From Auanema rhodensis (taxonomy: Eukaryota > Animalia > Nematoda), in assembly GCA_964057225.1 (NCBI GenBank), contig OZ059894.1, positions 14,570,001-14,634,000 on the forward strand: DNA of 64,000 nt, written 5' to 3'. Position numbers and translations under genes: made by a program. Every line of letters starts with the position of its first letter. The stretch's first letter is position 1. The notes under the pieces were generated by a model. It was not told the origin of the DNA. It did no database searches and saw nothing but the letters and a program-made list of their open reading frames with translations. Below are positions 36,001 to 48,772 of the stretch, one piece after another.

Positions 36001-36602
36001 TATGTCATTTGAAGGTTAATTTGAGTGATTCATCTATTACTTATTTGAATATCAGCAACTTTGTGCAACACTCACGTGAATAACATACGTGAATTGGCTA
36101 TTTTTATTTTAGCAATGACATAGTTGTGATACGGTTGATGGAACTGTGCGGGTAACACAATAATTATTTTTCTCATCTTTTTGTCATCATCAAAGGAAGC
36201 CATCAGCTTAAACATTCCTAAATCCATATTCAATGCTTGCCTCATAATTATTTTGTAAATGCCAGTTCGGGTAATCTGGTCACTGTGTTGTTTCAACACA
36301 TTAAGGGCACAATTTAGGGATTGACACTGACTTCTTGTGGAGCTGCATGCACATTAGCGGCTTCTTGCCTTTGAGGATTAACCCGCAAAAAGTCATGTCT
36401 TTTAGTGCATCCAATATGCTCCTCTTTCCTCTAATTATAACGGAAAACCCGCGGAGCTAGATTACTCCTAAAATACAGTATGTCGTAAGTGAAAGTAAGT
36501 ATTCCGATGAAAAATGCATAGAAAGGGGTCTAAGATATTACATTTAATGTTATAACAAAGTAACAATTCAACAATGACAAGTGTAACAACGATAACAATT
36601 AA

Positions 36603-38801
36603 TTAAGCTTTCTCTATTTGTGTAGAAGTTTGGAATCCAGCTTGAACTGAATTTACTGAACCCTTAGCTTTAGCACGAGGTCCCCAATTTTTTCCCTAAA
36701 ACCACATAAGTATGAGGAAACATGTAAATAAAATGTTATACCTTATTAACTTGGAACCTAATCATTTGATCATTCTTAATTTGAGAAGTTGCAAATGGAT
36801 GTAAGTTGAAGTTTACAGTATGGCTGAAACCAAACAATATGAAAAAAAAAACTTTTTCAATAAAAACAAACGTGATTTCTTTTTCTAAAATTTTACGTCC
36901 TGGAGCTTTCTCATCCAGTTTAGCATTATTCACATTACCTTGAGATGCCTAAAATAGAAAACTACTCTTTGGAGGCAAACTTTAAGATAAATACCACAGT
37001 TCGAATAATATCCCACAAAAATGCAGGTGGAGCATTAGTTTTAAGTGCTCTTGGGTTACAGTGGGAACCAGAGACCTAAATAAAACTGTTGATGATTATA
37101 AAAATAAAACCAAAACCATATAGCCGGCATTTAAAATAGCAGATTTAACATTGATAGCCTTTGGAACACAACATTTCACTACATTGGCTAGTTGATCGTG
37201 TTCATAATAAAGAGGCACATTGATTTCCTGAAAATAGTACCAATGAAGAAAACATATTTTTTCAAAAATGTATACTTCAGCGACGTTACTTAGAACACCG
37301 AGAAGTCTATTGTGAGTTCCTAAACGTTCCTCTTCGGGGGTATTATGAAGTCTATAAATGGAAATATGATTTGAAATCTCCGATCAACACTAACCCTTCG
37401 AGCATTCCAGATACAAATTCTTTATTATGGATAGGTCCAGTGTAAATTGGTCCAGCTTGATGAACTGAATGACCACAGTGGACACACTTGCTGTCGGGTC
37501 CTGTAAAAAGATGAATAATATTCGAGAGCAAAACAGCAAAAGCTATACCCATTAAATTCTGCTTGAAGATAGCAGTTGAGAACTTCACACTATTTCCCTC
37601 TTCAATCTTTCGAAGTGTTGGAATAACTTCCAAAGAATGACAACCAGAGCAAGCATATATATTTCCTACTTTTCTACAAAGCAAAAAACCTAATAAAGGC
37701 GAAGTAGAAATAAAACTTACGTTCCACTATCTTTAGCTTGCTTGGCACCAGTGTGGACACGGACGAAAACTCTGACATAAAAATCTATTGAAATAGCAAC
37801 CAAAGGTTCAATATAGCGAGAATAACGATTAGCATGAGAATCAATTGATCGTATTAGAATGCGTAAAGCCTGGAAATCATAAAACTAATCACAAAGAAAA
37901 TAAAATAAATAGATACCATCTCGTGACAACATTTTAATCTCACAGTAACAGCATCATATTTGTTATAGCAAGCTTCGGGAGTATTTCCACAAAGAACTGC
38001 CATATCAGTACAAGTTACCATAAGAAGTCCTGAAATTTTAAAATAAGGCCAAGAAAAAAGTAAAATTACATACCTTTATCGGCTACACATTGAACAGCAG
38101 AATCTAGAAATACAGATGCTGAACCATAGGGATCCAAGTCAACAGCATGAAAACGCTTATCAATATTTCGATGGCCCATCATAGTCATGCTGAAAATGTA
38201 TATAACAATGTTGAAATTCAAGAATAAATGTTACATAGCATCTCCAAAATAAGCCTTCACTTTGTCTTCAACACCATTTAATTTTATATTTTCCTTGATA
38301 GATTCGACAGCATTTTCAGAAAAATCGTTTGCCAAAATATATTCAATATTGGGCACCTAAATATAAATCTCAGTACACATTATATATGAATTTAAAACCT
38401 CCTGAGAGAAGCGCATAGCACGTAGACCTGTTGCAGATAAAGCATCCAATATTCTTATAGAACCATCCTACAAAAATAACGTTTTTTTCTTTAATGAAGA
38501 AGAAAATTGACCTCATTATCAATAGTTACACGTTTTTTCTTCGGTTCTGGCTCAGCTTCAGTAATTGTCGTTCCGGAATTCTTTTTTTCAATAGCAGCTA
38601 ACCTTTCTTGTACAAATCGCCGCAAAACACAGACACTGAAGTAATATTTTATAATATATACATATGTATTGCTGCTTACGTTAAATCTCTATTGAACTCT
38701 TGGACAGGATTATAAAATACAGGCCCATGAAAACCAATTTTGGCTTTACCTTCAGTGACGATATTGAATTCTGAGGATTCAGTGTTTGATTCTCCGCTCA
38801 T
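36603..38801 (-). CDS. trm-1: tRNA (guanine26-N2,N2)-dimethyltransferase TRM1, multi-exon
   Basis: Motifs [108 protein letters not shown] and [10 protein letters not shown]. Stop TAA at 36605-36603. Confidence 0.96.
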
Positions 38802-39564
38802 TCTGCTCTTCTAAAAAATTTATATTTATTCCAGTCGAGATAAATCAAATTACTGAGTTATAACGTAATCTACGCAAAAGCCTACCACCACTACTTGGGG
38901 TAGCTATCCTCAATACGGAGTTCAATACGCCCTAAAACTCGATGTTTAACACATTGGGTAGAATTTAAAATCATGCGTTTCAAAAAACACAAAGAAATTA
39001 TATATAATTTATTTCATATAGTTACTTAGTATAGCTTTCATTAACATTAGATACAGTTAAAGATATATAATCTACAATTTCAAGATATTTAAGTTTTATT
39101 CATGTTTTAAATGTCGTCGTTTGATTAGAAAGACGCGCAGACACGCAATTTTACACACAAAGTGTGTTATAACTTTCAGTTGTTCAATGCTTTGATATTA
39201 GCATGTTCTGAACTTCAAACTTAAAAAAAAATAGAAAATACAATTGCAGCTATATATAGTTTTCAAAACAATTTGCATTATATTGATTCCGTAAATACCA
39301 GCTTGGACTGAATCGAATACTTCTTCACCTTTGGCCAATAACAAAAATGTTCATGAAAAGTTCTGGTTGTAGTCATGATGTGGATGAACATAAATATATA
39401 AAACATTTATTTAATTCTTATCCGATCAACCGGATTAGTTAGGTGATGTAGTTAACAGTAAAAACTACAGCTGATCCAACAATCTCAATCCATAATAATT
39501 TAATTTTTTAATTTTCCGTTTTTGCACAAGGGCAATTATTATTACCTCATTTTACAAAATTTGC

Positions 39565-42500
39565 TGGGCTTGGTATGAACCCCTTTTCCGGAAAATGGAG
39601 AGGCCCTAGCCAAATCTAAGTCAGATATTCAGATTCTACAGATTTCAATATCCAAGTTCTCTATATTCGTTTTTGAATAAAATCCATGATCGAGGAGAAA
39701 ATCGAGGATTCACCGGTCACATCGTGTACACAGCCTGAACTTTTTTGTGAACAATCTTGTGGATGGGCTTGGTATGAACCCCTTTTCCGGAAAATGGAGA
39801 GGCCCTAGCCAAATCTAAGTCAGATATTCAGATTCTACAGATTTCAATATCCAAGTTCTCTATATTCGTTTTTGAATAAAATCCATGATCGAGGAGAAAA
39901 ACGGGGAATCACCGGTCACATCGTGTACACAGCCTGAACTTTTTTGTGAACAATCTTGTGGATGGGCTTGGTATGAACCCCTTTTCCGGAAAATGGAGAG
40001 GCCCTAGCCAAATCTAAGTCAGATATTCAGATTCTACAGATTTCAATATCCAAGTTCTCTATATTCGTTTTTGAATAAAATCCATGATCGAGGAGAAAAA
40101 CGGGGAATCACCGGTCACATCGTGTACACAGCCTGAACTTTTTTGTGAACAATCTTGTGGATGGGCTTGGTATGAACCCCTTTTCCGGAAAATGGAGAGG
40201 CCCTAGCCAAATCTAAGTCAGATATTCAGATTCTACAGATTTCAATATCCAAGTTCTCTATATTCGTTTTTGAATAAAATCCATGATCGAGGAGAAAAAC
40301 GGGGAATCACCGGTCACATCGTGTACACAGCCTGAACTTTTTTGTGAACAATCTTGTGGATGGGCTTGGTATGAACCCCTTTTCCGGAAAATGGAGAGGC
40401 CCTAGCCAAATCTAAGTCAGATATTCAGATTCTACAGATTTCAATATCCAAGTTCTCTATATTCGTTTTTGAATAAAATCCATGATCGAGGAGAAAAACG
40501 GGGAATCACCGGTCACATCGTGTACACAGCCTGAACTTTTTTGTGAACAATCTTGTGGATGGGCTTGGTATGATCCCCTTTTCCGGAAAATGGAGAGGCC
40601 CTAGCCAAATCTAAGTCAGATATTCAGATTCTACAGATTTCAATATCCAAGTTCTCTATATTCGTTTTTGAATAAAATCCATGATCGAGGAGAAAAACGG
40701 GGAATCACCGGTCACATCGTGTACACAGCCTGAACTTTTTTGTGAACAATCTTGTGGATGGGCTTGGTATGAACCCCTTTTCCGGAAAATGGAGAGGCCC
40801 TAGCCAAATCTAAGTCAGATATTCAGATTCTACAGATTTCAATATCCAAGTTCTCTATATTCGTTTTTGAATAAAATCCATGATCGAGGAGAAAAACGGG
40901 GAATCACCGGTCACATCGTGTACACAGCCTGAACTTTTTTGTGAACAATCTTGTGGATGGGCTTGGTATGAACCCCTTTTCCGGAAAATGGAGAGGCCCT
41001 AGCCAAATCTAAGTCAGATATTCAGATTCTACAGATTTCAATATCCAAGTTCTCTATATTCGTTTTTGAATAAAATCCATGATCGAGGAGAAAAACGGGG
41101 AATCACCGGTCACATCGTGTACACAGCCTGAACTTTTTTGTGAACAATCTTGTGGATGGGCTTGGTATGAACCCCTTTTCCGGAAAATGGAGAGGCCCTA
41201 GCCAAATCTAAGTCAGATATTCAGATTCTACAGATTTCAATATCCAAGTTCTCTATATTCGTTTTTGAATAAAATCCATGATCGAGGAGAAAAACGGGGA
41301 ATCACCGGTCACATCGTGTACACAGCCTGAACTTTTTTGTGAACAATCTTGTGGATGGGCTTGGTATGATCCCCTTTTCCGGAAAATGGAGAGGCCCTAG
41401 CCAAATCTAAGTCAGATATTCAGATTCTACAGATTTCAATATCCAAGTTCTCTATATTCGTTTTTGAATAAAATCCATGATCGAGGAGAAAATCGAGGAT
41501 TCACCGGTCACATCGTGTACACAGCCTGAACTTTTTTGTGAACAATCTTGTGGATGGGCTTGGTATGAACCCCTTTTCCGGAAAATGGAGAGGCCCTAGC
41601 CAAATCTAAGTCAGATATTCAGATTCTACAGATTTCAATATCCAAGTTCTGTATATTCTTATTTGAATAAAATCCATGATCGAGGAGAAAAACGGGGAAT
41701 CACCGGTCACATCGTGTACACAGCCTGAACTTTTTTGTGAACAATCTTGTGGATGGGCTTGGTATGAACCCCTTTTCCGGAAAATGGAGAGGCCCTAGCC
41801 AAATCTAAGTCAGATATTCAGATTCTACAGATTTCAATATCCAAGTTCTCTATATTCTTATTTGAATAAAATCCATGATCGAGGAGAAAAACGGGGAATC
41901 ACCGGTCACATCGTGTACACAGCCTGAACTTTTTTGTGAACAATCTTGTGGATGGGCTTGGTATGAACCCCTTTTCCGGAAAATGGAGAGGCCCTAGCCA
42001 AATCTAAGTCAGATATTCAGATTCTACAGATTTCAATATCCAAGTTCTCTATATTCGTTTTTGAATAAAATCCATGATCGAGGAGAAAAACGGGGAATCA
42101 CCGGTCACATCGTGTACACAGCCTGAACTTTTTTGTGAACAATCTTGTGGATGGGCTTGGTATGATCCCCTTTTCCGGAAAATGGAGAGGCCCTAGCCAA
42201 ATCTAAGTCAGATATTCAGATTCTACAGATTTCAATATCCAAGTTCTCTATATTCGTTTTTGAATAAAATCCATGATCGAGGAGAAAAACGGGGAATCAC
42301 CGGTCACATCGTGTACACAGCCTGAACTTTTTTGTGAACAATCTTGTGGATGGGCTTGATATGAACCCCTTTTCCGGAAAATGGAGAGGCCCTAGCCAAA
42401 TCTAAGTCAGATATTCAGATTCTACAGATTTCAATATCCAAGTTCTCTATATTCGTTTTTGAATAAAATCCATGATCGAGGAGAAAAACGGGGAATCACC

Positions 42501-45500
42501 GGTCACATCGTGTACACAGCCTGAACTTTTTTGTGAACAATCTTGTGGATGGGCTTGGTATGATCCCCTTTTCCGGAAAATGGAGAGGCCCTAGCCAAAT
42601 CTAAGTCAGATATTCAGATTCTACAGATTTCAATATCCAAGTTCTCTATATTCGTTTTTTAAATAAAATCCATGATCGAGGAGAAAATCGAGGATTCACC
42701 GGTCACATCGTGTACACAGCCTGAACTTTTTTGTGAACAATCTTGTGGATGGGCTTGGTATGAACCCCTTTTCCGGAAAATGGAGAGGCCCTAGCCAAAT
42801 CTAAGTCAGATATTCAGATTCTACAGATTTTAATATCCAAGTTCTCTATATTCGTTTTTGAATAAAATCCATGATCGAGGAGAAAAACGGGGAATCACCG
42901 GTCACATCGTGTACACAGCCTGAACTTTTTTGTGAACAATCTTGTGGATGGGCTTGGTATGATCCCCTTTTCCGGAAAATGGAGAGGCCCTAGCCAAATC
43001 TAAGTCAGATATTCAGATTCTACAGATTTCAATATCCAAGTTCTCTATATTCGTTTTTGAATAAAATCCATGATCGAGGAGAAAATCGAGGATTCACCGG
43101 TCACATCGTGTACACAGCCTGAACTTTTTTGTGAACAATCTTGTGGATGGGCTTGGTATGAACCCCTTTTCCGGAAAATGGAGAGGCCCTAGCCAAATCT
43201 AAGTCAGATATTCAGATTCTACAGATTTCAATATCCAAGTTCTGTATATTCTTATTTGAATAAAATCCATGATCGAGGAGAAAAACGGGGAATCACCGGT
43301 CACATCGTGTACACAGCCTGAACTTTTTTGTGAACAATCTTGTGGATGGGCTTGGTATGAACCCCTTTTCCGGAAAATGGAGAGGCCCTAGCCAAATCTA
43401 AGTCAGATATTCAGATTCTACAGATTTCAATATCCAAGTTCTCTATATTCTTATTTGAATAAAATCCATGATCGAGGAGAAAAACGGGGAATCACCGGTC
43501 ACATCGTGTACACAGCCTGAACTTTTTTGTGAACAATCTTGTGGATGGGCTTGGTATGAACCCCTTTTCCGGAAAATGGAGAGGCCCTAGCCAAATCTAA
43601 GTCAGATATTCAGATTCTACAGATTTCAATATCCAAGTTCTCTATATTCGTTTTTGAATAAAATCCATGATCGAGGAGAAAAACGGGGAATCACCGGTCA
43701 CATCGTGTACACAGCCTGAACTTTTTTGTGAACAATCTTGTGGATGGGCTTGGTATGATCCCCTTTTCCGGAAAATGGAGAGGCCCTAGCCAAATCTAAG
43801 TCAGATATTCAGATTCTACAGATTTCAATATCCAAGTTCTCTATATTCTTATTTGAATAAAATCCATGATCGAGGAGAAAAACGGGGAATCACCGGTCAC
43901 ATCGTGTACACAGCCTGAACTTTTTTGTGAACAATCTTGTGGATGGGCTTGGTATGAACCCCTTTTCCGGAAAATGGAGAGGCCCTAGCCAAATCTAAGT
44001 CAGATATTCAGATTCTACAGATTTCAATATCCAAGTTCTCTATATTCGTTTTTGAATAAAATCCATGATCGAGGAGAAAAACGGGGAATCACCGGTCACA
44101 TCGTGTACACAGCCTGAACTTTTTTGTGAACAATCTTGTGGATGGGCTTGGTATGATCCCCTTTTCCGGAAAATGGAGAGGCCCTAGCCAAATCTAAGTC
44201 AGATATTCAGATTCTACAGATTTCAATATCCAAGTTCTCTATATTCGTTTTTGAATAAAATCCATGATCGAGGAGAAAAACGGGGAATCACCGGTCACAT
44301 CGTGTACACAGCCTGAACTTTTTTGTGAACAATCTTGTGGATGGGCTTGGTATGAACCCCTTTTCCGGAAAATGGAGAGGCCCTAGCCAAATCTAAGTCA
44401 GATATTCAGATTCTACAGATTTCAATATCCAAGTTCTCTATATTCGTTTTTGAATAAAATCCATGATCGAGGAGAAAAACGGGGAATCACCGGTCACATC
44501 GTGTACACAGCCTGAACTTTTTTGTGAACAATCTTGTGGATGGGCTTGGTATGATCCCCTTTTCCGGAAAATGGAGAGGCCCTAGCCAAATCTAAGTCAG
44601 ATATTCAGATTCTACAGATTTCAATATCCAAGTTCTCTATATTCGTTTTTTAAATAAAATCCATGATCGAGGAGAAAATCGAGGATTCACCGGTCACATC
44701 GTGTACACAGCCTGAACTTTTTTGTGAACAATCTTGTGGATGGGCTTGGTATGAACCCCTTTTCCGGAAAATGGAGAGGCCCTAGCCAAATCTAAGTCAG
44801 ATATTCAGATTCTACAGATTTTAATATCCAAGTTCTCTATATTCGTTTTTGAATAAAATCCATGATCGAGGAGAAAAACGGGGAATCACCGGTCACATCG
44901 TGTACACAGCCTGAACTTTTTTGTGAACAATCTTGTGGATGGGCTTGGTATGAACCCCTTTTCCGGAAAATGGAGAGGCCCTAGCCAAATCTAAGTCAGA
45001 TATTCAGATTCTACAGATTTCAATATCCAAGTTCTCTATATTCGTTTTTGAATAAAATCCATGATCGAGGAGAAAAACGGGGAATCACCGGTCACATCGT
45101 GTACACAGCCTGAACTTTTTTGTGAACAATCTTGTGGATGGGCTTGGTATGATCCCCTTTTCCGGAAAATGGAGAGGCCCTAGCCAAATCTAAGTCAGAT
45201 ATTCAGATTCTACAGATTTCAATATCCAAGTTCTCTATATTCGTTTTTTAAATAAAATCCATGATCGAGGGTCACCGGTCACATCGTGTACACAGCCTGA
45301 ACTTTTTTGTGAACAATCTTGTGGATGGGCTTGGTATGAACCCCTTTTCCGGAAAATGGAGAGGCCCTAGCCAAATCTAAGTCAGATATTCAGATTCTAC
45401 AGATTTCAATATCCAAGTTCTCTATATTCGTTTTTGAATAAAATCCATGATCGAGGAGAAAATCGAGGATTCACCGGTCACATCGTGTACACAGCCTGAA

Positions 45501-46504
45501 CTTTTTTGTGAACAATCTTGTGGATGGGCTTGGTATGAACCCCTTTTCCGGAAAATGGAGAGGCCCTAGCCAAATCTAAGTCAGATATTCAGATTCTACA
45601 GATTTCAATATCCAAGTTCTCTATATTCGTTTTTGAATAAAATCCATGATCGAGGAGAAAATCGAGGATTCACCGGTCACATCGTGTACACAGCCTGAAC
45701 TTTTTTGTGAACAATCTTGTGGATGGGCTTGGTATGAACCCCTTTTCCGGAAAATGGAGAGGCCCTAGCCAAATCTAAGTCAGATATTCAGATTCTACAG
45801 ATTTCAATATCCAAGTTCTCTATATTCGTTTTTGAATAAAATCCATGATCGAGGAGAAAATCGAGGATTCACCGGTCACATCGTGTACACAGCCTGAACT
45901 TTTTTGTGAACAATCTTGTGGATGGGCTTGGTATGAACCCCTTTTCCGGAAAATGGAGAGGCCCTAGCCAAATCTAAGTCAGATATTCAGATTCTACAGA
46001 TTTCAATATCCAAGTTCTCTATATTCGTTTTTGAATAAAATCCATGATCGAGGAGAAAATCGAGGATTCACCGGTCACATCGTGTACACAGCCTGAACTT
46101 TTTTGTGAACAATCTTGTGGATGGGCTTGGTATGAACCCCTTTTCCGGAAAATGGAGAGGCCCTAGCCAAATCTAAGTCAGATATTCAGATTCTACAGAT
46201 TTCAATATCCAAGTTCTCTATATTCGTTTTTGAATAAAATCCATGATCGAGGAGAAAATCGAGGATTCACCGGTCACATCGTGTACACAGCCTGAACTTT
46301 TTTGTGAACAATCTTGTGGATGGGCTTGGTATGAACCCCTTTTCCGGAAAATGGAGAGGCCCTAGCCAAATCTAAGTCAGATATTCAGATTCTACAGATT
46401 TCAATATCCAAGTTCTCTATATTCGTTTTTGAATAAAACCCATGATCGAGGAGAAAATCGAGGATTCACCGGTCACATCGTGTACACAGCCTGAACTTTT
46501 TTGT
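39565..46504 (+). repeat. 199-bp tandem satellite array, about 35 near-identical copies
   Basis: Monomer gggcttggtatgaaccccttttccggaaaatggagaggccctagccaaatctaagtcagatattcagattctacag...cagcctgaacttttttgtgaacaatcttgtggat recurs every 199 nt (e.g. 40561, 40760). Few diagnostic variants. Confidence 0.98.
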
Positions 46505-47431: not shown

Positions 47432-48772
47432 ATGAGCCCGAGGACTAGGAGCCGGTGAGGAGGAGCGCGAGGACCAGGAGCCCGAGGACTAGGAGCCGGT
47501 GAGGAGGAGCGCGAGGACCAGGAGCCCGAGGACAAGGAGCCGGTGAGGAGGAGCTCGAGGACCAGGAGCCCGAGGACCAGGAGCGGGAGGACAAGGAGAG
47601 GGAGGACAAGGAGCGCGAGGACAAGGAGCCCGAGGACTAGGGGCCGGTGAGGAGGAGCGCGAGTATCAGGAGCCCGAGGAGCAGGAGGAAGAGGCTAGAA
47701 CCAGGAGCCGATAAGGAGGAGCCCGAGGACCAGAAGCCCGAGGAGCAGGACGAGGAGGAGACCAGAACCAGAGCCGATGAGGAGGAGCCCGAGGAGCAGG
47801 AGCAGAGGAGGTCCAGGATGAGGATTCCGAGGAGCAGGAGAATTGAGCTTGAGGGAAGCCTTTTGCCGTCCTGGAGCCCGAGGAGGAGGAGCCGATGAAG
47901 AGAAGCCCGCAACCAGGAGCCTGAGGAGAAGCCCGCAACCAGGAGCCCGAGGAGCAGGACGAGGAGGAGACCAGAACCAGAGCCGATGAGGAGGAGCCCG
48001 AGGAGCAGGAGCAGAGGAGGTCCAGGATGAGATTTCCGAGGAGCAGGAGAATTGAGCTTGAGGGAAGCCTTTTGCCGTCCTGGAGCCCGAGGAGGAGGAG
48101 CCGATGAGGAGAAGCCCGCAACCAGGAGCCCAGAACCAGAAGGACCCAAACCAGGAGGCCGATGCGGAGGCCGAGGACCAGGAGCCCAGGATGAGGATTC
48201 TGAGGAACAGGAGCCGAGGACCAGGAGCCCGAGGAGGAGGAGGCCGATGACCAGGAGCCCAGAACCAGGAGGCCGATGAGGAGGCCGAGGAACAGGAGTC
48301 GAGGACCAGGAGCTCAGGATGAGGATTCTGAGGAATAGGAGAATTGAGCTTGAGGGAAGTCTTTTGCCTTCCTGGAGCCCGAGGAGGAGTAGCCCACAAC
48401 CACGAGTCCAGAACCAGGAACCCGAGGACCAGGAGCCCAGAACCAGAAGGACCCAAACCAGGAGGCCGATGCGGAGGCCGAGGACCAGGAGCCCAGGATG
48501 AGGATTCTGAGAAACAGGAGCCGAGGACCAGGAGCCCGAGGAGGAGGAGGCCGATGACCAGGAGCGCAGAACCAGGAGGCCGATGAGGAGGCCGAGGAAC
48601 AGGAGTCGAGGACCAGGAGCTCAGGATGAGGATTCTGAGGAATAGGAGAATTGAGCTTGAGGGAAGTCTTTTGCCTTCCTGGAGCCCGAGGAGGAGTAGC
48701 CCACAACCACGAGTCTAGAACTAGGAACCCGAGGACCAGGAGCCCAGAACCAGAAGCCCGAGGACCAGGAGA
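47432..48772 (+). repeat. GC-rich, purine-skewed complex minisatellite (15-bp GAGCCCGAGGACCAG-type units with 209-bp and 307-bp duplications)
   Basis: The + strand is very T-poor. Duplication offsets 47741/47950 (209 bp) and 48141/48448 (307 bp). Module GGAGAATTGAGCTTGAGGGAAG occurs four times. Confidence 0.92.

What the first reader, a model, noticed from the sequence alone, without database searches (positions are those of the whole stretch)
38802..38931. Hidden AUG-less upstream exon of trm-1 encoding a mitochondrial-presequence-like peptide
Seen (- strand): TTTTAG acceptor ending 38932, a 78-nt stop-free exon (38931-38854), a 43-nt GT-AG intron of typical size (38853-38811), then AAG AGC AGA ATG in frame with TRM1. 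The extension reads GVLNSVLRIATPSSGGRLLRRLRYNSKSR-M: Arg/Ser/Leu-rich, no acidic residues, no AUG. A near-cognate TTG is at 38925-38923. Knowledge: yeast Trm1 and human TRMT1 are dual nuclear/mitochondrial through N-terminal extensions, and non-AUG initiation makes mitochondrial isoforms of yeast ALA1 and GRS1. Inference: trans-splicing at 38932 versus 38811, plus UUG initiation, switches TRM-1 between mitochondrial and nuclear forms. The nearest upstream ATG exon I tried (~39048-39027) joins out of frame.
Basis: partly seen in the sequence, partly recalled or inferred. Interest (0 to 1): 0.7.

Follow-up and report, generated by a model that had tools for sequence, protein, structure and literature searches.

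The report
Hidden AUG-less leader exon on TRM-1
A nematode tRNA methyltransferase gene (TRM-1) has a real, spliced upstream exon that stays in frame without any AUG and reads like a mitochondrial import signal. Similar leaders turn up in most other nematodes checked, so a mitochondrial form started at a non-AUG codon is likely but not shown.

Summary
RNA contigs from four runs of one study all join 38810 to 38854, so the 43-nt intron 38853-38811 is really spliced. The 78-nt exon 38931-38854 therefore belongs to the main TRM-1 mRNA.

The contigs stop 7-8 nt past the TTTTAG acceptor. This fits an SL1 leader added at 38932, but I could not read the letters. No in-frame AUG is possible: a TAG sits at 38934-38932, and SL1 carries an in-frame TAA.

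The 29-codon leader is stop-free, has no Asp or Glu, and has 7 Arg/Lys (composition shuffles, P about 0.001). Its GC is 0.45, against 0.26 in the 300 nt upstream.

The main new evidence is comparative. In-frame, basic leaders with few or no acidic residues lie before the canonical Met in Auanema, strongylids, Pristionchus, Caenorhabditis and ascarids, with an AUG only in some gene models. The 5' intron always lies a multiple of 3 nt before the ATG. Mesorhabditis is a counter-example, and sequence-level conservation is weak.

Translation from UUG (38925-38923) and mitochondrial import remain inferred. The proposed switch by alternative trans-splicing at 38811 has no support. Verdict: a probable new member of a known kind, a non-AUG mitochondrial extension. 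Confidence about 0.55.

The parts
38932..38937 (-). TTTTAG acceptor at the 5' edge of the leader exon. It is probably an SL1 trans-splice site. Its TAG (38934-38932) is an in-frame stop if the RNA is left unspliced.
   Evidence: GC drops from 0.449 in the exon to 0.260 in the 300 nt upstream. RNA contigs end at 38939 or 38938, and one has 2 unlaid letters. The genome sequence 38939-38932 matches the last 8 nt of SL1 at 7 of 8 positions. SL1 genes are abundant in this genome.
38854..38931 (-). Leader exon of 78 nt: 26 in-frame codons with no stop, no ATG, no Asp or Glu, and 5 Arg.
   Evidence: It is present in RNA contigs of 4 runs.
38923..38925 (-). In-frame TTG at codon 3 of the exon, with G at -3. 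It is the candidate near-cognate start. A TTG lies at the same codon in the Auanema leader.
   Evidence: Its use as a start codon is inferred, not shown.
38811..38853 (-). 43-nt GT-AG intron inside the leader, in phase 0 and 9 nt before the ATG.
   Evidence: The joint 38810->38854 is present in all 4 runs. The length is typical of this gene's introns, which are 41-48 nt.
38802..38810 (-). Last 9 nt of the leader (AAG AGC AGA = Lys Ser Arg), at the start of exon 2.
38799..38801 (-). Canonical ATG of TRM-1. It aligns with the annotated start of the Auanema orthologue.
   Evidence: 82% identity, residues 1-519 against 1-517 of P0073.
36603..38801 (-). TRM-1 coding region: 15 coding exons, 521 aa, tRNA (guanine26-N2)-dimethyltransferase. 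It is the only TRM1 locus in the genome.

Best explanation
The stretch 38931-38854 is a genuine 5' exon of the single TRM-1 gene, which encodes the tRNA m2,2G26 methyltransferase. It is joined to the ATG exon by removal of a 43-nt intron. The mRNA most likely begins with SL1 added at the 38932 acceptor.

The resulting 87-nt leader is in frame with the ATG and has no AUG. It encodes an Arg/Leu/Ser-rich peptide free of acidic residues.

The most likely mechanism has three steps:
1. A minority of scanning ribosomes start at a near-cognate codon in the leader. The best candidate is UUG 38925-38923.
2. This makes a form about 27 residues longer, whose extension acts as a mitochondrial presequence.
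3. Most ribosomes scan on to AUG 38801 and make the nuclear/cytosolic form.

One mRNA would then serve both compartments, as in yeast ALA1, GRS1 and TRZ1.

Shown: the exon, the intron, the frame, the absence of AUG, the composition, and the recurrence in relatives. Inferred: the SL1 5' end, initiation at UUG, and import into mitochondria.
For: 1. Splicing. The joint 38810->38854 is in the RNA contigs of all 4 runs.

2. No AUG is possible. The leader has no ATG; an in-frame TAG lies at 38934-38932; SL1 read in this frame contains TAA.

3. Composition. There are 0 stops, 0 D/E and 7 K/R in 29 codons, with a shuffle P of about 0.001. The other frames have 3 and 4 stops. Exon GC is 0.449, against 0.380 for coding exons, 0.243 for introns and 0.260 upstream.

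4. Recurrence in lineages whose leader DNA no longer aligns:
- Auanema (82% identical protein) has the same exon-intron-ATG anatomy by prediction. Its 28 codons are open and free of D/E, with TTG at codon 3.
- Transcript contigs of a strongylid carry a 24-codon basic, acid-free leader without AUG.
- P. pacificus and P. entomophagus have an ..VRRLLTG.. leader without AUG in the exon.
- Ancylostoma and Cooperia and three Caenorhabditis species fit too. The Caenorhabditis leaders share an ILRK motif with synonymous codon changes.
- Across 10 leaders, stops total 1 in frame 0 against 14 and 11 in the other frames (counted by hand).

5. Gene models in Cylicocyclus, Necator, C. auriculariae, Ascaris and Parascaris carry basic, mostly acid-free extensions that start with AUG. 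Crustacean, insect and mollusc TRMT1 have the same layout with AUGs: presequence-like extension, then Met, then an acidic N-terminus.

6. The distance from the 5' intron to the ATG is a multiple of 3 in every case: 9, 9, 15, 15, 12, 18 and 21, plus 3 in Auanema where I chose the acceptor.

7. The genome has a single TRM1 locus. Trm1/TRMT1 serves both nuclear-encoded and mitochondrial tRNAs in yeast and human, and human TRMT1 has an N-terminal mitochondrial signal (PMC10275265, PMC11139479, PMC4033218).
Against: - There is no direct evidence of translation or import.
- No presequence predictor was available, so 'presequence-like' rests on composition only.
- The leader peptides of this genome and Auanema do not align better than shuffled peptides (P = 0.12).
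- The Pristionchus pair has 10 differences spread evenly over codon positions (2, 4, 4). This does not look like purifying selection on a protein (counted by hand).
- The Mesorhabditis leader is acidic and has AUGs.
- Several relatives' splice sites are my predictions. Annotated extensions are biased towards open frames.
- Near-cognate codons are common, so finding a TTG means little.
- I found no evidence on whether nematode mitochondrial tRNAs carry m2,2G26.
Confidence: 0.55

Rival explanations
1. The exon is an ordinary untranslated 5' UTR exon. Its open frame and basic composition come from chance plus its higher GC. Any conservation reflects RNA-level roles such as splicing or translation control.
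For: - Own and Auanema leader peptides are not significantly alike.
- The Pristionchus leader exon is 87% identical at the DNA level, with changes spread evenly over codon positions, as for a conserved non-coding element.
- In Pristionchus the +1 frame is also open and Arg-rich.
- Mesorhabditis does not fit the pattern.
- 5' UTRs avoid AUGs in any case.
Against: - Frame 0 carries 1 stop against 14 and 11 in the other frames over 10 leaders.
- D/E is absent or nearly absent in frame 0 only in most of the leaders.
- The intron-to-ATG spacing is always a multiple of 3.
- The Caenorhabditis ILRK motif is kept through synonymous changes.
- The same layout with AUGs is found in ascarids, some strongylids and arthropods.
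Confidence: 0.3
2. Trans-splicing at 38932 gives the long mitochondrial mRNA. Trans-splicing directly at the 38811 acceptor gives a short mRNA that can only make the nuclear form.
For: The 38811 acceptor (TTTTTTAG) would be a good trans-splice site, and SL1 genes are very abundant. Contigs drop rare variants, so a minor SL1-38810 form cannot be excluded.
Against: In three runs a single contig crosses the cis-spliced joint without a break at 38810, and no loose end is reported there. The switch is not required, because leaky scanning explains two products from one mRNA.
Confidence: 0.1
3. An AUG-bearing exon still further upstream is cis-spliced to 38931 in a form not seen here, so the extension starts at a normal AUG.
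For: Gene models in Cylicocyclus, Necator, C. auriculariae and ascarids place an AUG in a further exon.
Against: Contigs of three runs end 7-10 nt past the acceptor rather than running on into another exon. Those nucleotides fit the SL1 tail or the genome. No contig covers 39025-39226. The only further contig piece, at about 39227-39283, is a partial match with long unmatched ends, probably a chance match.
Confidence: 0.05

Closest known systems
Yeast ALA1, GRS1 and TRZ1: mitochondrial isoforms made from upstream near-cognate codons (PMC6582344, and references listed in PMC8887476)
   Same: A single gene for a tRNA-handling enzyme needed in two compartments. It has an in-frame leader without AUG that encodes a presequence, followed by the canonical AUG for the main form. 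Leaky scanning is the proposed logic.
   Different: Here nothing is tested experimentally. The leader is split by an intron and probably follows a trans-spliced SL1. The organism is a nematode.
Yeast Trm1 and human TRMT1 dual nuclear/mitochondrial targeting (PMC10275265, PMC4033218, PMC11139479)
   Same: It is the same enzyme family. One gene serves nuclear-encoded and mitochondrial tRNAs through an N-terminal signal.
   Different: From my own knowledge, the yeast and human extensions start at AUG. The nematode leader here has none.
Crustacean, insect and mollusc TRMT1 gene models with and without a presequence-like N-terminus
   Same: A basic, acid-free extension sits directly before a second Met and an acidic N-terminus, for example ..RGGRR-MATETQ in a crab model.
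   Different: Those extensions begin with AUG and are annotated as coding.
C. elegans TRM-1 (ZC376.5), listed as a tRNA m2,2G26 enzyme in PMC4033218
   Same: Orthologue. Relatives in the genus show a predicted in-frame basic leader exon 15 nt before the ATG.
   Different: I could not fetch the C. elegans locus. I found no paper describing a mitochondrial form or a non-AUG start for it.

Membership tests
TRM1/TRMT1 tRNA (guanine26-N2)-dimethyltransferase | The TRM domain (Pfam PF02005) across the protein. | tested here: met
   Five exons hit PF02005 above the cut-off. The genome scan finds the domain only at this locus.
TRM1/TRMT1 tRNA (guanine26-N2)-dimethyltransferase | Full-length orthology to named nematode TRM-1 proteins. 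| tested here: met
   Local BLAST of the spliced model gives 82% identity to Auanema P0073 and 73% to Haemonchus P0069, both end to end.
Non-AUG-initiated mitochondrial N-terminal extension | The leader on the mature mRNA is in frame, stop-free and without AUG. | tested here: met
Non-AUG-initiated mitochondrial N-terminal extension | A near-cognate codon in usable context upstream of the presequence. | tested here: met
   TTG at 38925-38923 with G at -3, and further TTG/ATA codons in frame. This is a weak criterion, because such codons are common.
Non-AUG-initiated mitochondrial N-terminal extension | The extension is predicted as a mitochondrial presequence. | tested here: inconclusive
   Only composition was tested: 7 K/R, 0 D/E, an amphipathic RLLRRL stretch, and a hydrophobic moment of 0.79 over 11 residues. 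No TargetP or MitoFates was available.
Non-AUG-initiated mitochondrial N-terminal extension | Frame and character of the extension are kept in relatives. | tested here: met
   Kept in 10 leaders from 4-5 lineages. Exception: Mesorhabditis. Sequence identity itself is not significant.
Non-AUG-initiated mitochondrial N-terminal extension | The extension is translated, and import depends on it. | not testable with these tools
   Needs ribosome profiling, proteomics or reporter fusions.
SL1 trans-spliced nematode mRNA | The genome encodes SL1 RNA with a donor site and an Sm site. | tested here: met
   More than 3,600 matches to the 22-nt SL1 allowing up to 2 mismatches; every match listed is exact. 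They lie in 252-bp arrays, followed by GTA and AATTTTGG. Rfam SL1 scores reach 62 bits, below the gathering score of 75.
SL1 trans-spliced nematode mRNA | SL1 sequence is joined to the acceptor in transcripts. | tested here: inconclusive
   Contigs reach 38939 or 38938, and one has 2 more unlaid letters. This is the pattern expected for an SL1 tail, but the letters were not shown.

The most novel reading that the evidence does not exclude
Across rhabditid, strongylid, diplogastrid and perhaps ascarid nematodes, TRM-1 keeps a mitochondrial presequence that has lost its AUG in many lineages and is started at near-cognate codons just behind the spliced leader. Genome annotations would then file a conserved coding exon as 5' UTR. 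Other dual-compartment nematode enzymes may hide similar mitochondrial forms.
Probability: 0.45. Interest if true: 0.65.

Novelty: new member of a known kind. Interest (0 to 1): 0.5.

Why it matters
Annotated nematode TRM-1 proteins begin with an acidic N-terminus and no import signal, whereas yeast and human Trm1/TRMT1 act in mitochondria as well as the nucleus.

A translated leader without AUG would explain how a single nematode gene reaches mitochondria. It would add a trans-spliced animal example to a mechanism known mainly from yeast, plants and mammals. It would also show that gene models which insist on AUG starts miss conserved coding exons.

The idea is directly testable in C. elegans, Pristionchus or Auanema.

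Tried and rejected
- The run search found only four runs of one study, all kept as contigs. Starts, strand and SL letters could therefore not be read.
- A contig piece at about 39227-39283 also matches near 36847, with 255-nt unmatched ends. I took it for a low-complexity chance match, not an upstream exon.
- The exon-based search of protein representatives found no entry for this organism's own protein. Its transcript contigs could therefore not be fetched by exact look-up.
- C. briggsae P0084 has no gene on record.
- The bacterial-type promoter and terminator scan is not meaningful here.
- Literature searches found nothing on nematode trm-1 isoforms, non-AUG starts in nematode tRNA enzymes, or m2,2G in nematode mitochondrial tRNAs.
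- Earlier notes of this scan held nothing on this theme.
- I rejected the idea that SL1 itself supplies a start. In this frame SL1 reads through a TAA, and it has no AUG.

Full report
**What is in the sequence.** Read on the minus strand, the window shows TTTTAG ending at 38932. A 78-nt stretch follows (38931-38854), with no stop in frame 0 and no ATG in any frame. Then come GT at 38853, AG at 38811 (43 nt), the nine bases AAG AGC AGA, and the ATG at 38801. TTG is the third codon of the stretch (38925-38923). The downstream exons hit Pfam TRM PF02005.

**RNA evidence.** One run search gave four runs of a single study, kept as assembled contigs. Laid on 36500-39500, they show 15 joints with GT..AG ends on the minus strand, so they are RNA. 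All four carry the joint 38810->38854.
- The 43-nt intron is therefore real, and the upstream exon is part of the main mRNA.
- The gene has 15 coding exons separated by 14 introns of 41-48 nt, plus the leader exon and its 43-nt intron. It encodes 521 aa from the ATG.
- The contigs extend 86, 86, 85 and 62 nt beyond the joint, that is to 38939, 38939, 38938 and 38915.
- One record has 88 letters there, of which 86 were laid.

**The 5' end.** The genome is a nematode's. It holds more than 3,600 matches to the 22-nt SL1 (up to 2 mismatches allowed; every match listed is exact), in 252-bp arrays, each followed by a GT donor and an Sm-like site.
- The last eight bases of SL1 (AGTTTGAG) match the genome at 38939-38932 (AGTTTTAG) in 7 of 8 positions, and the next base does not match.
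- An SL1 tail would therefore be laid exactly to 38939 with the rest left loose, which is what one search shows.
- GC also falls from 0.449 in the exon to 0.260 in the 300 nt upstream.
- I take SL1 addition at 38932 as the likelier reading, about two in three. A transcription start near 38940 is the alternative. The letters themselves were not shown.
- Either way no in-frame AUG can precede the leader. TAG lies in frame at 38934-38932, and SL1 read in this frame contains TAA.

**Is the leader more than chance?**
- In frame 0 the 29 codons have no stop, no Asp or Glu, and 7 Arg/Lys. The other frames have 3 and 4 stops and several acidic residues.
- Shuffles of the leader give 0.13 for an open frame, 0.008 for open with no acidic residue, and 0.001 when at least 7 basic residues are also required.
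- Taken alone this is suggestive, not decisive.

**Relatives.** An exon-by-exon search, a profile search and local comparison place the protein next to Auanema sp. JU1783 (82% identity), then strongylids (about 73%).
- **Auanema.** Its locus has the same anatomy by prediction: acceptor, 81-nt exon, 41-nt intron, AAA, ATG. The 28 in-frame codons are open and acid-free, with TTG again at codon 3. The other frames have 3 and 2 stops.
- **Strongylid transcripts.** Contigs of one species (L015-L021) carry a 24-codon basic, acid-free leader without AUG. It ends ..ARLARA before the Met and has in-frame AUU CUG.
- **Pristionchus.** P. pacificus and P. entomophagus share a leader exon, an intron 9 nt before the ATG (the same place as here) and an ..VRRLLTG.. 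peptide, with no AUG in the exon. The P. entomophagus model is annotated as 5'-partial for that reason.
- **Ancylostoma and Cooperia.** Both have short basic in-frame leaders from the nearest acceptor.
- **Caenorhabditis.** C. remanei, C. brenneri and C. auriculariae have a predicted leader exon 15, 15 and 12 nt before the ATG. Its in-frame peptide shares I-L-[RK]-K, with codon changes of the synonymous kind such as CGT/CGA, CTA/TTA and CCT/CCG.
- **Gene models with an AUG.** Models in Cylicocyclus, Necator, C. auriculariae, Ascaris and Parascaris place an AUG further upstream and translate basic, mostly acid-free extensions.
- **Outside nematodes.** Many arthropod and mollusc TRMT1 models have a basic, acid-free extension. 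In several it sits directly before a second Met.

**Two summary counts.**
- Over ten nematode leaders, stops total 1 in frame 0 against 14 and 11 in the other frames. The single one lies upstream of the basic part. This count is by hand. If stops fell evenly among frames the chance would be about 4e-4, but the species are not independent.
- The 5' intron lies 9, 9, 15, 15, 12, 18 and 21 nt before the ATG, and 3 in Auanema where I chose between two AGs. All are multiples of 3. That is expected if insertions and deletions in the leader are constrained to keep a reading frame.

**What speaks against a coding leader.**
- The leader peptides of this genome and Auanema align no better than shuffled peptides (P = 0.12).
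- The two Pristionchus leader exons differ at 10 of 78 positions, spread 2, 4 and 4 over codon positions. The intron is unalignable. This looks like DNA-level rather than protein-level constraint.
- The Mesorhabditis leader is acidic and has AUGs.
- Splice sites in Auanema, P. pacificus and Caenorhabditis are my predictions.
- Annotated extensions are open by construction.
- No presequence predictor, ribosome profiling or proteome was available.
- I found no evidence on whether nematode mitochondrial tRNAs carry m2,2G26.

**Mechanism proposed.** One mRNA gives two products. A minority of scanning ribosomes start at a near-cognate codon in the leader, most likely UUG 38925-38923, which would lie 29-31 nt from the 5' end if SL1 is added. 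The extra 27 or so residues would act as a presequence. The rest start at AUG 38801.
- This is the logic shown for yeast ALA1, GRS1 and TRZ1 (PMC6582344).
- It fits the known need for Trm1/TRMT1 in both compartments (PMC10275265, PMC4033218, PMC11139479).
- It also fits the single TRM1 locus in this genome.
Single contigs cross 38810 in three runs. It cannot be excluded from contigs alone.

**Comparison and novelty.** The kind is known: a non-AUG N-terminal extension giving a mitochondrial isoform. I found no report of it for nematode TRM-1. I file it as a probable new member of a known kind. Confidence that the leader is translated and targets mitochondria is about 0.55. Confidence in the exon, the intron and the AUG-less frame is about 0.95.

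Noticed in passing
window 39565-46504: A 199-bp satellite, 34.9 copies at 98% identity, starts about 630 bp upstream of the TRM-1 leader exon. At least the first two units carry a 40-aa ATG ORF on the + strand.
   Followed up: partly
window 47434-48756: Purine-rich minisatellites built on GAGCCCGAGGACCAG-like units, with periods of 15, 44, 64, 209 and 307.
   Followed up: no
G000 contig C3, about 6.74-7.10 Mb and 14.13 Mb (loci L001-L010): More than 3,600 matches to the 22-nt SL1 (up to 2 mismatches allowed; the listed ones are exact), in tandem arrays of 252-bp units and, at 14.13 Mb, 341-bp units. This is far more than the roughly hundred copies I recall for C. elegans.
   Followed up: partly
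window 37500-37547 (minus strand): This 48-nt TRM-1 intron is in frame and stop-free. The mechanical ORF 37352-37684 reads straight through it, so retention would insert 16 residues.
   Followed up: no
window 36847 and 39227-39283: One contig in each of runs X2 and X3 matches both places only in part, with 255-nt unmatched ends. It is probably a T-rich chance match from another transcript.
   Followed up: no
L014 compared with L015-L021 (strongylid transcript contigs): One contig has a different, longer 5' part that joins the others 23-24 nt before the ATG. This suggests an alternative first exon in that species. Two contigs begin with template-switch adapter sequence, which marks true cDNA 5' ends.
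   Followed up: no
L028 1100-1260 (Mesorhabditis spiculigera): The TRM-1 leader here is acidic and holds two extra in-frame AUGs, unlike the other nematodes examined.
   Followed up: partly
L011 3706-3805 (Ancylostoma caninum): A run of N is flanked by a duplicated copy of the TRM-1 5' end, about 300 bp upstream of the annotated start. It is probably an assembly artefact.
   Followed up: no
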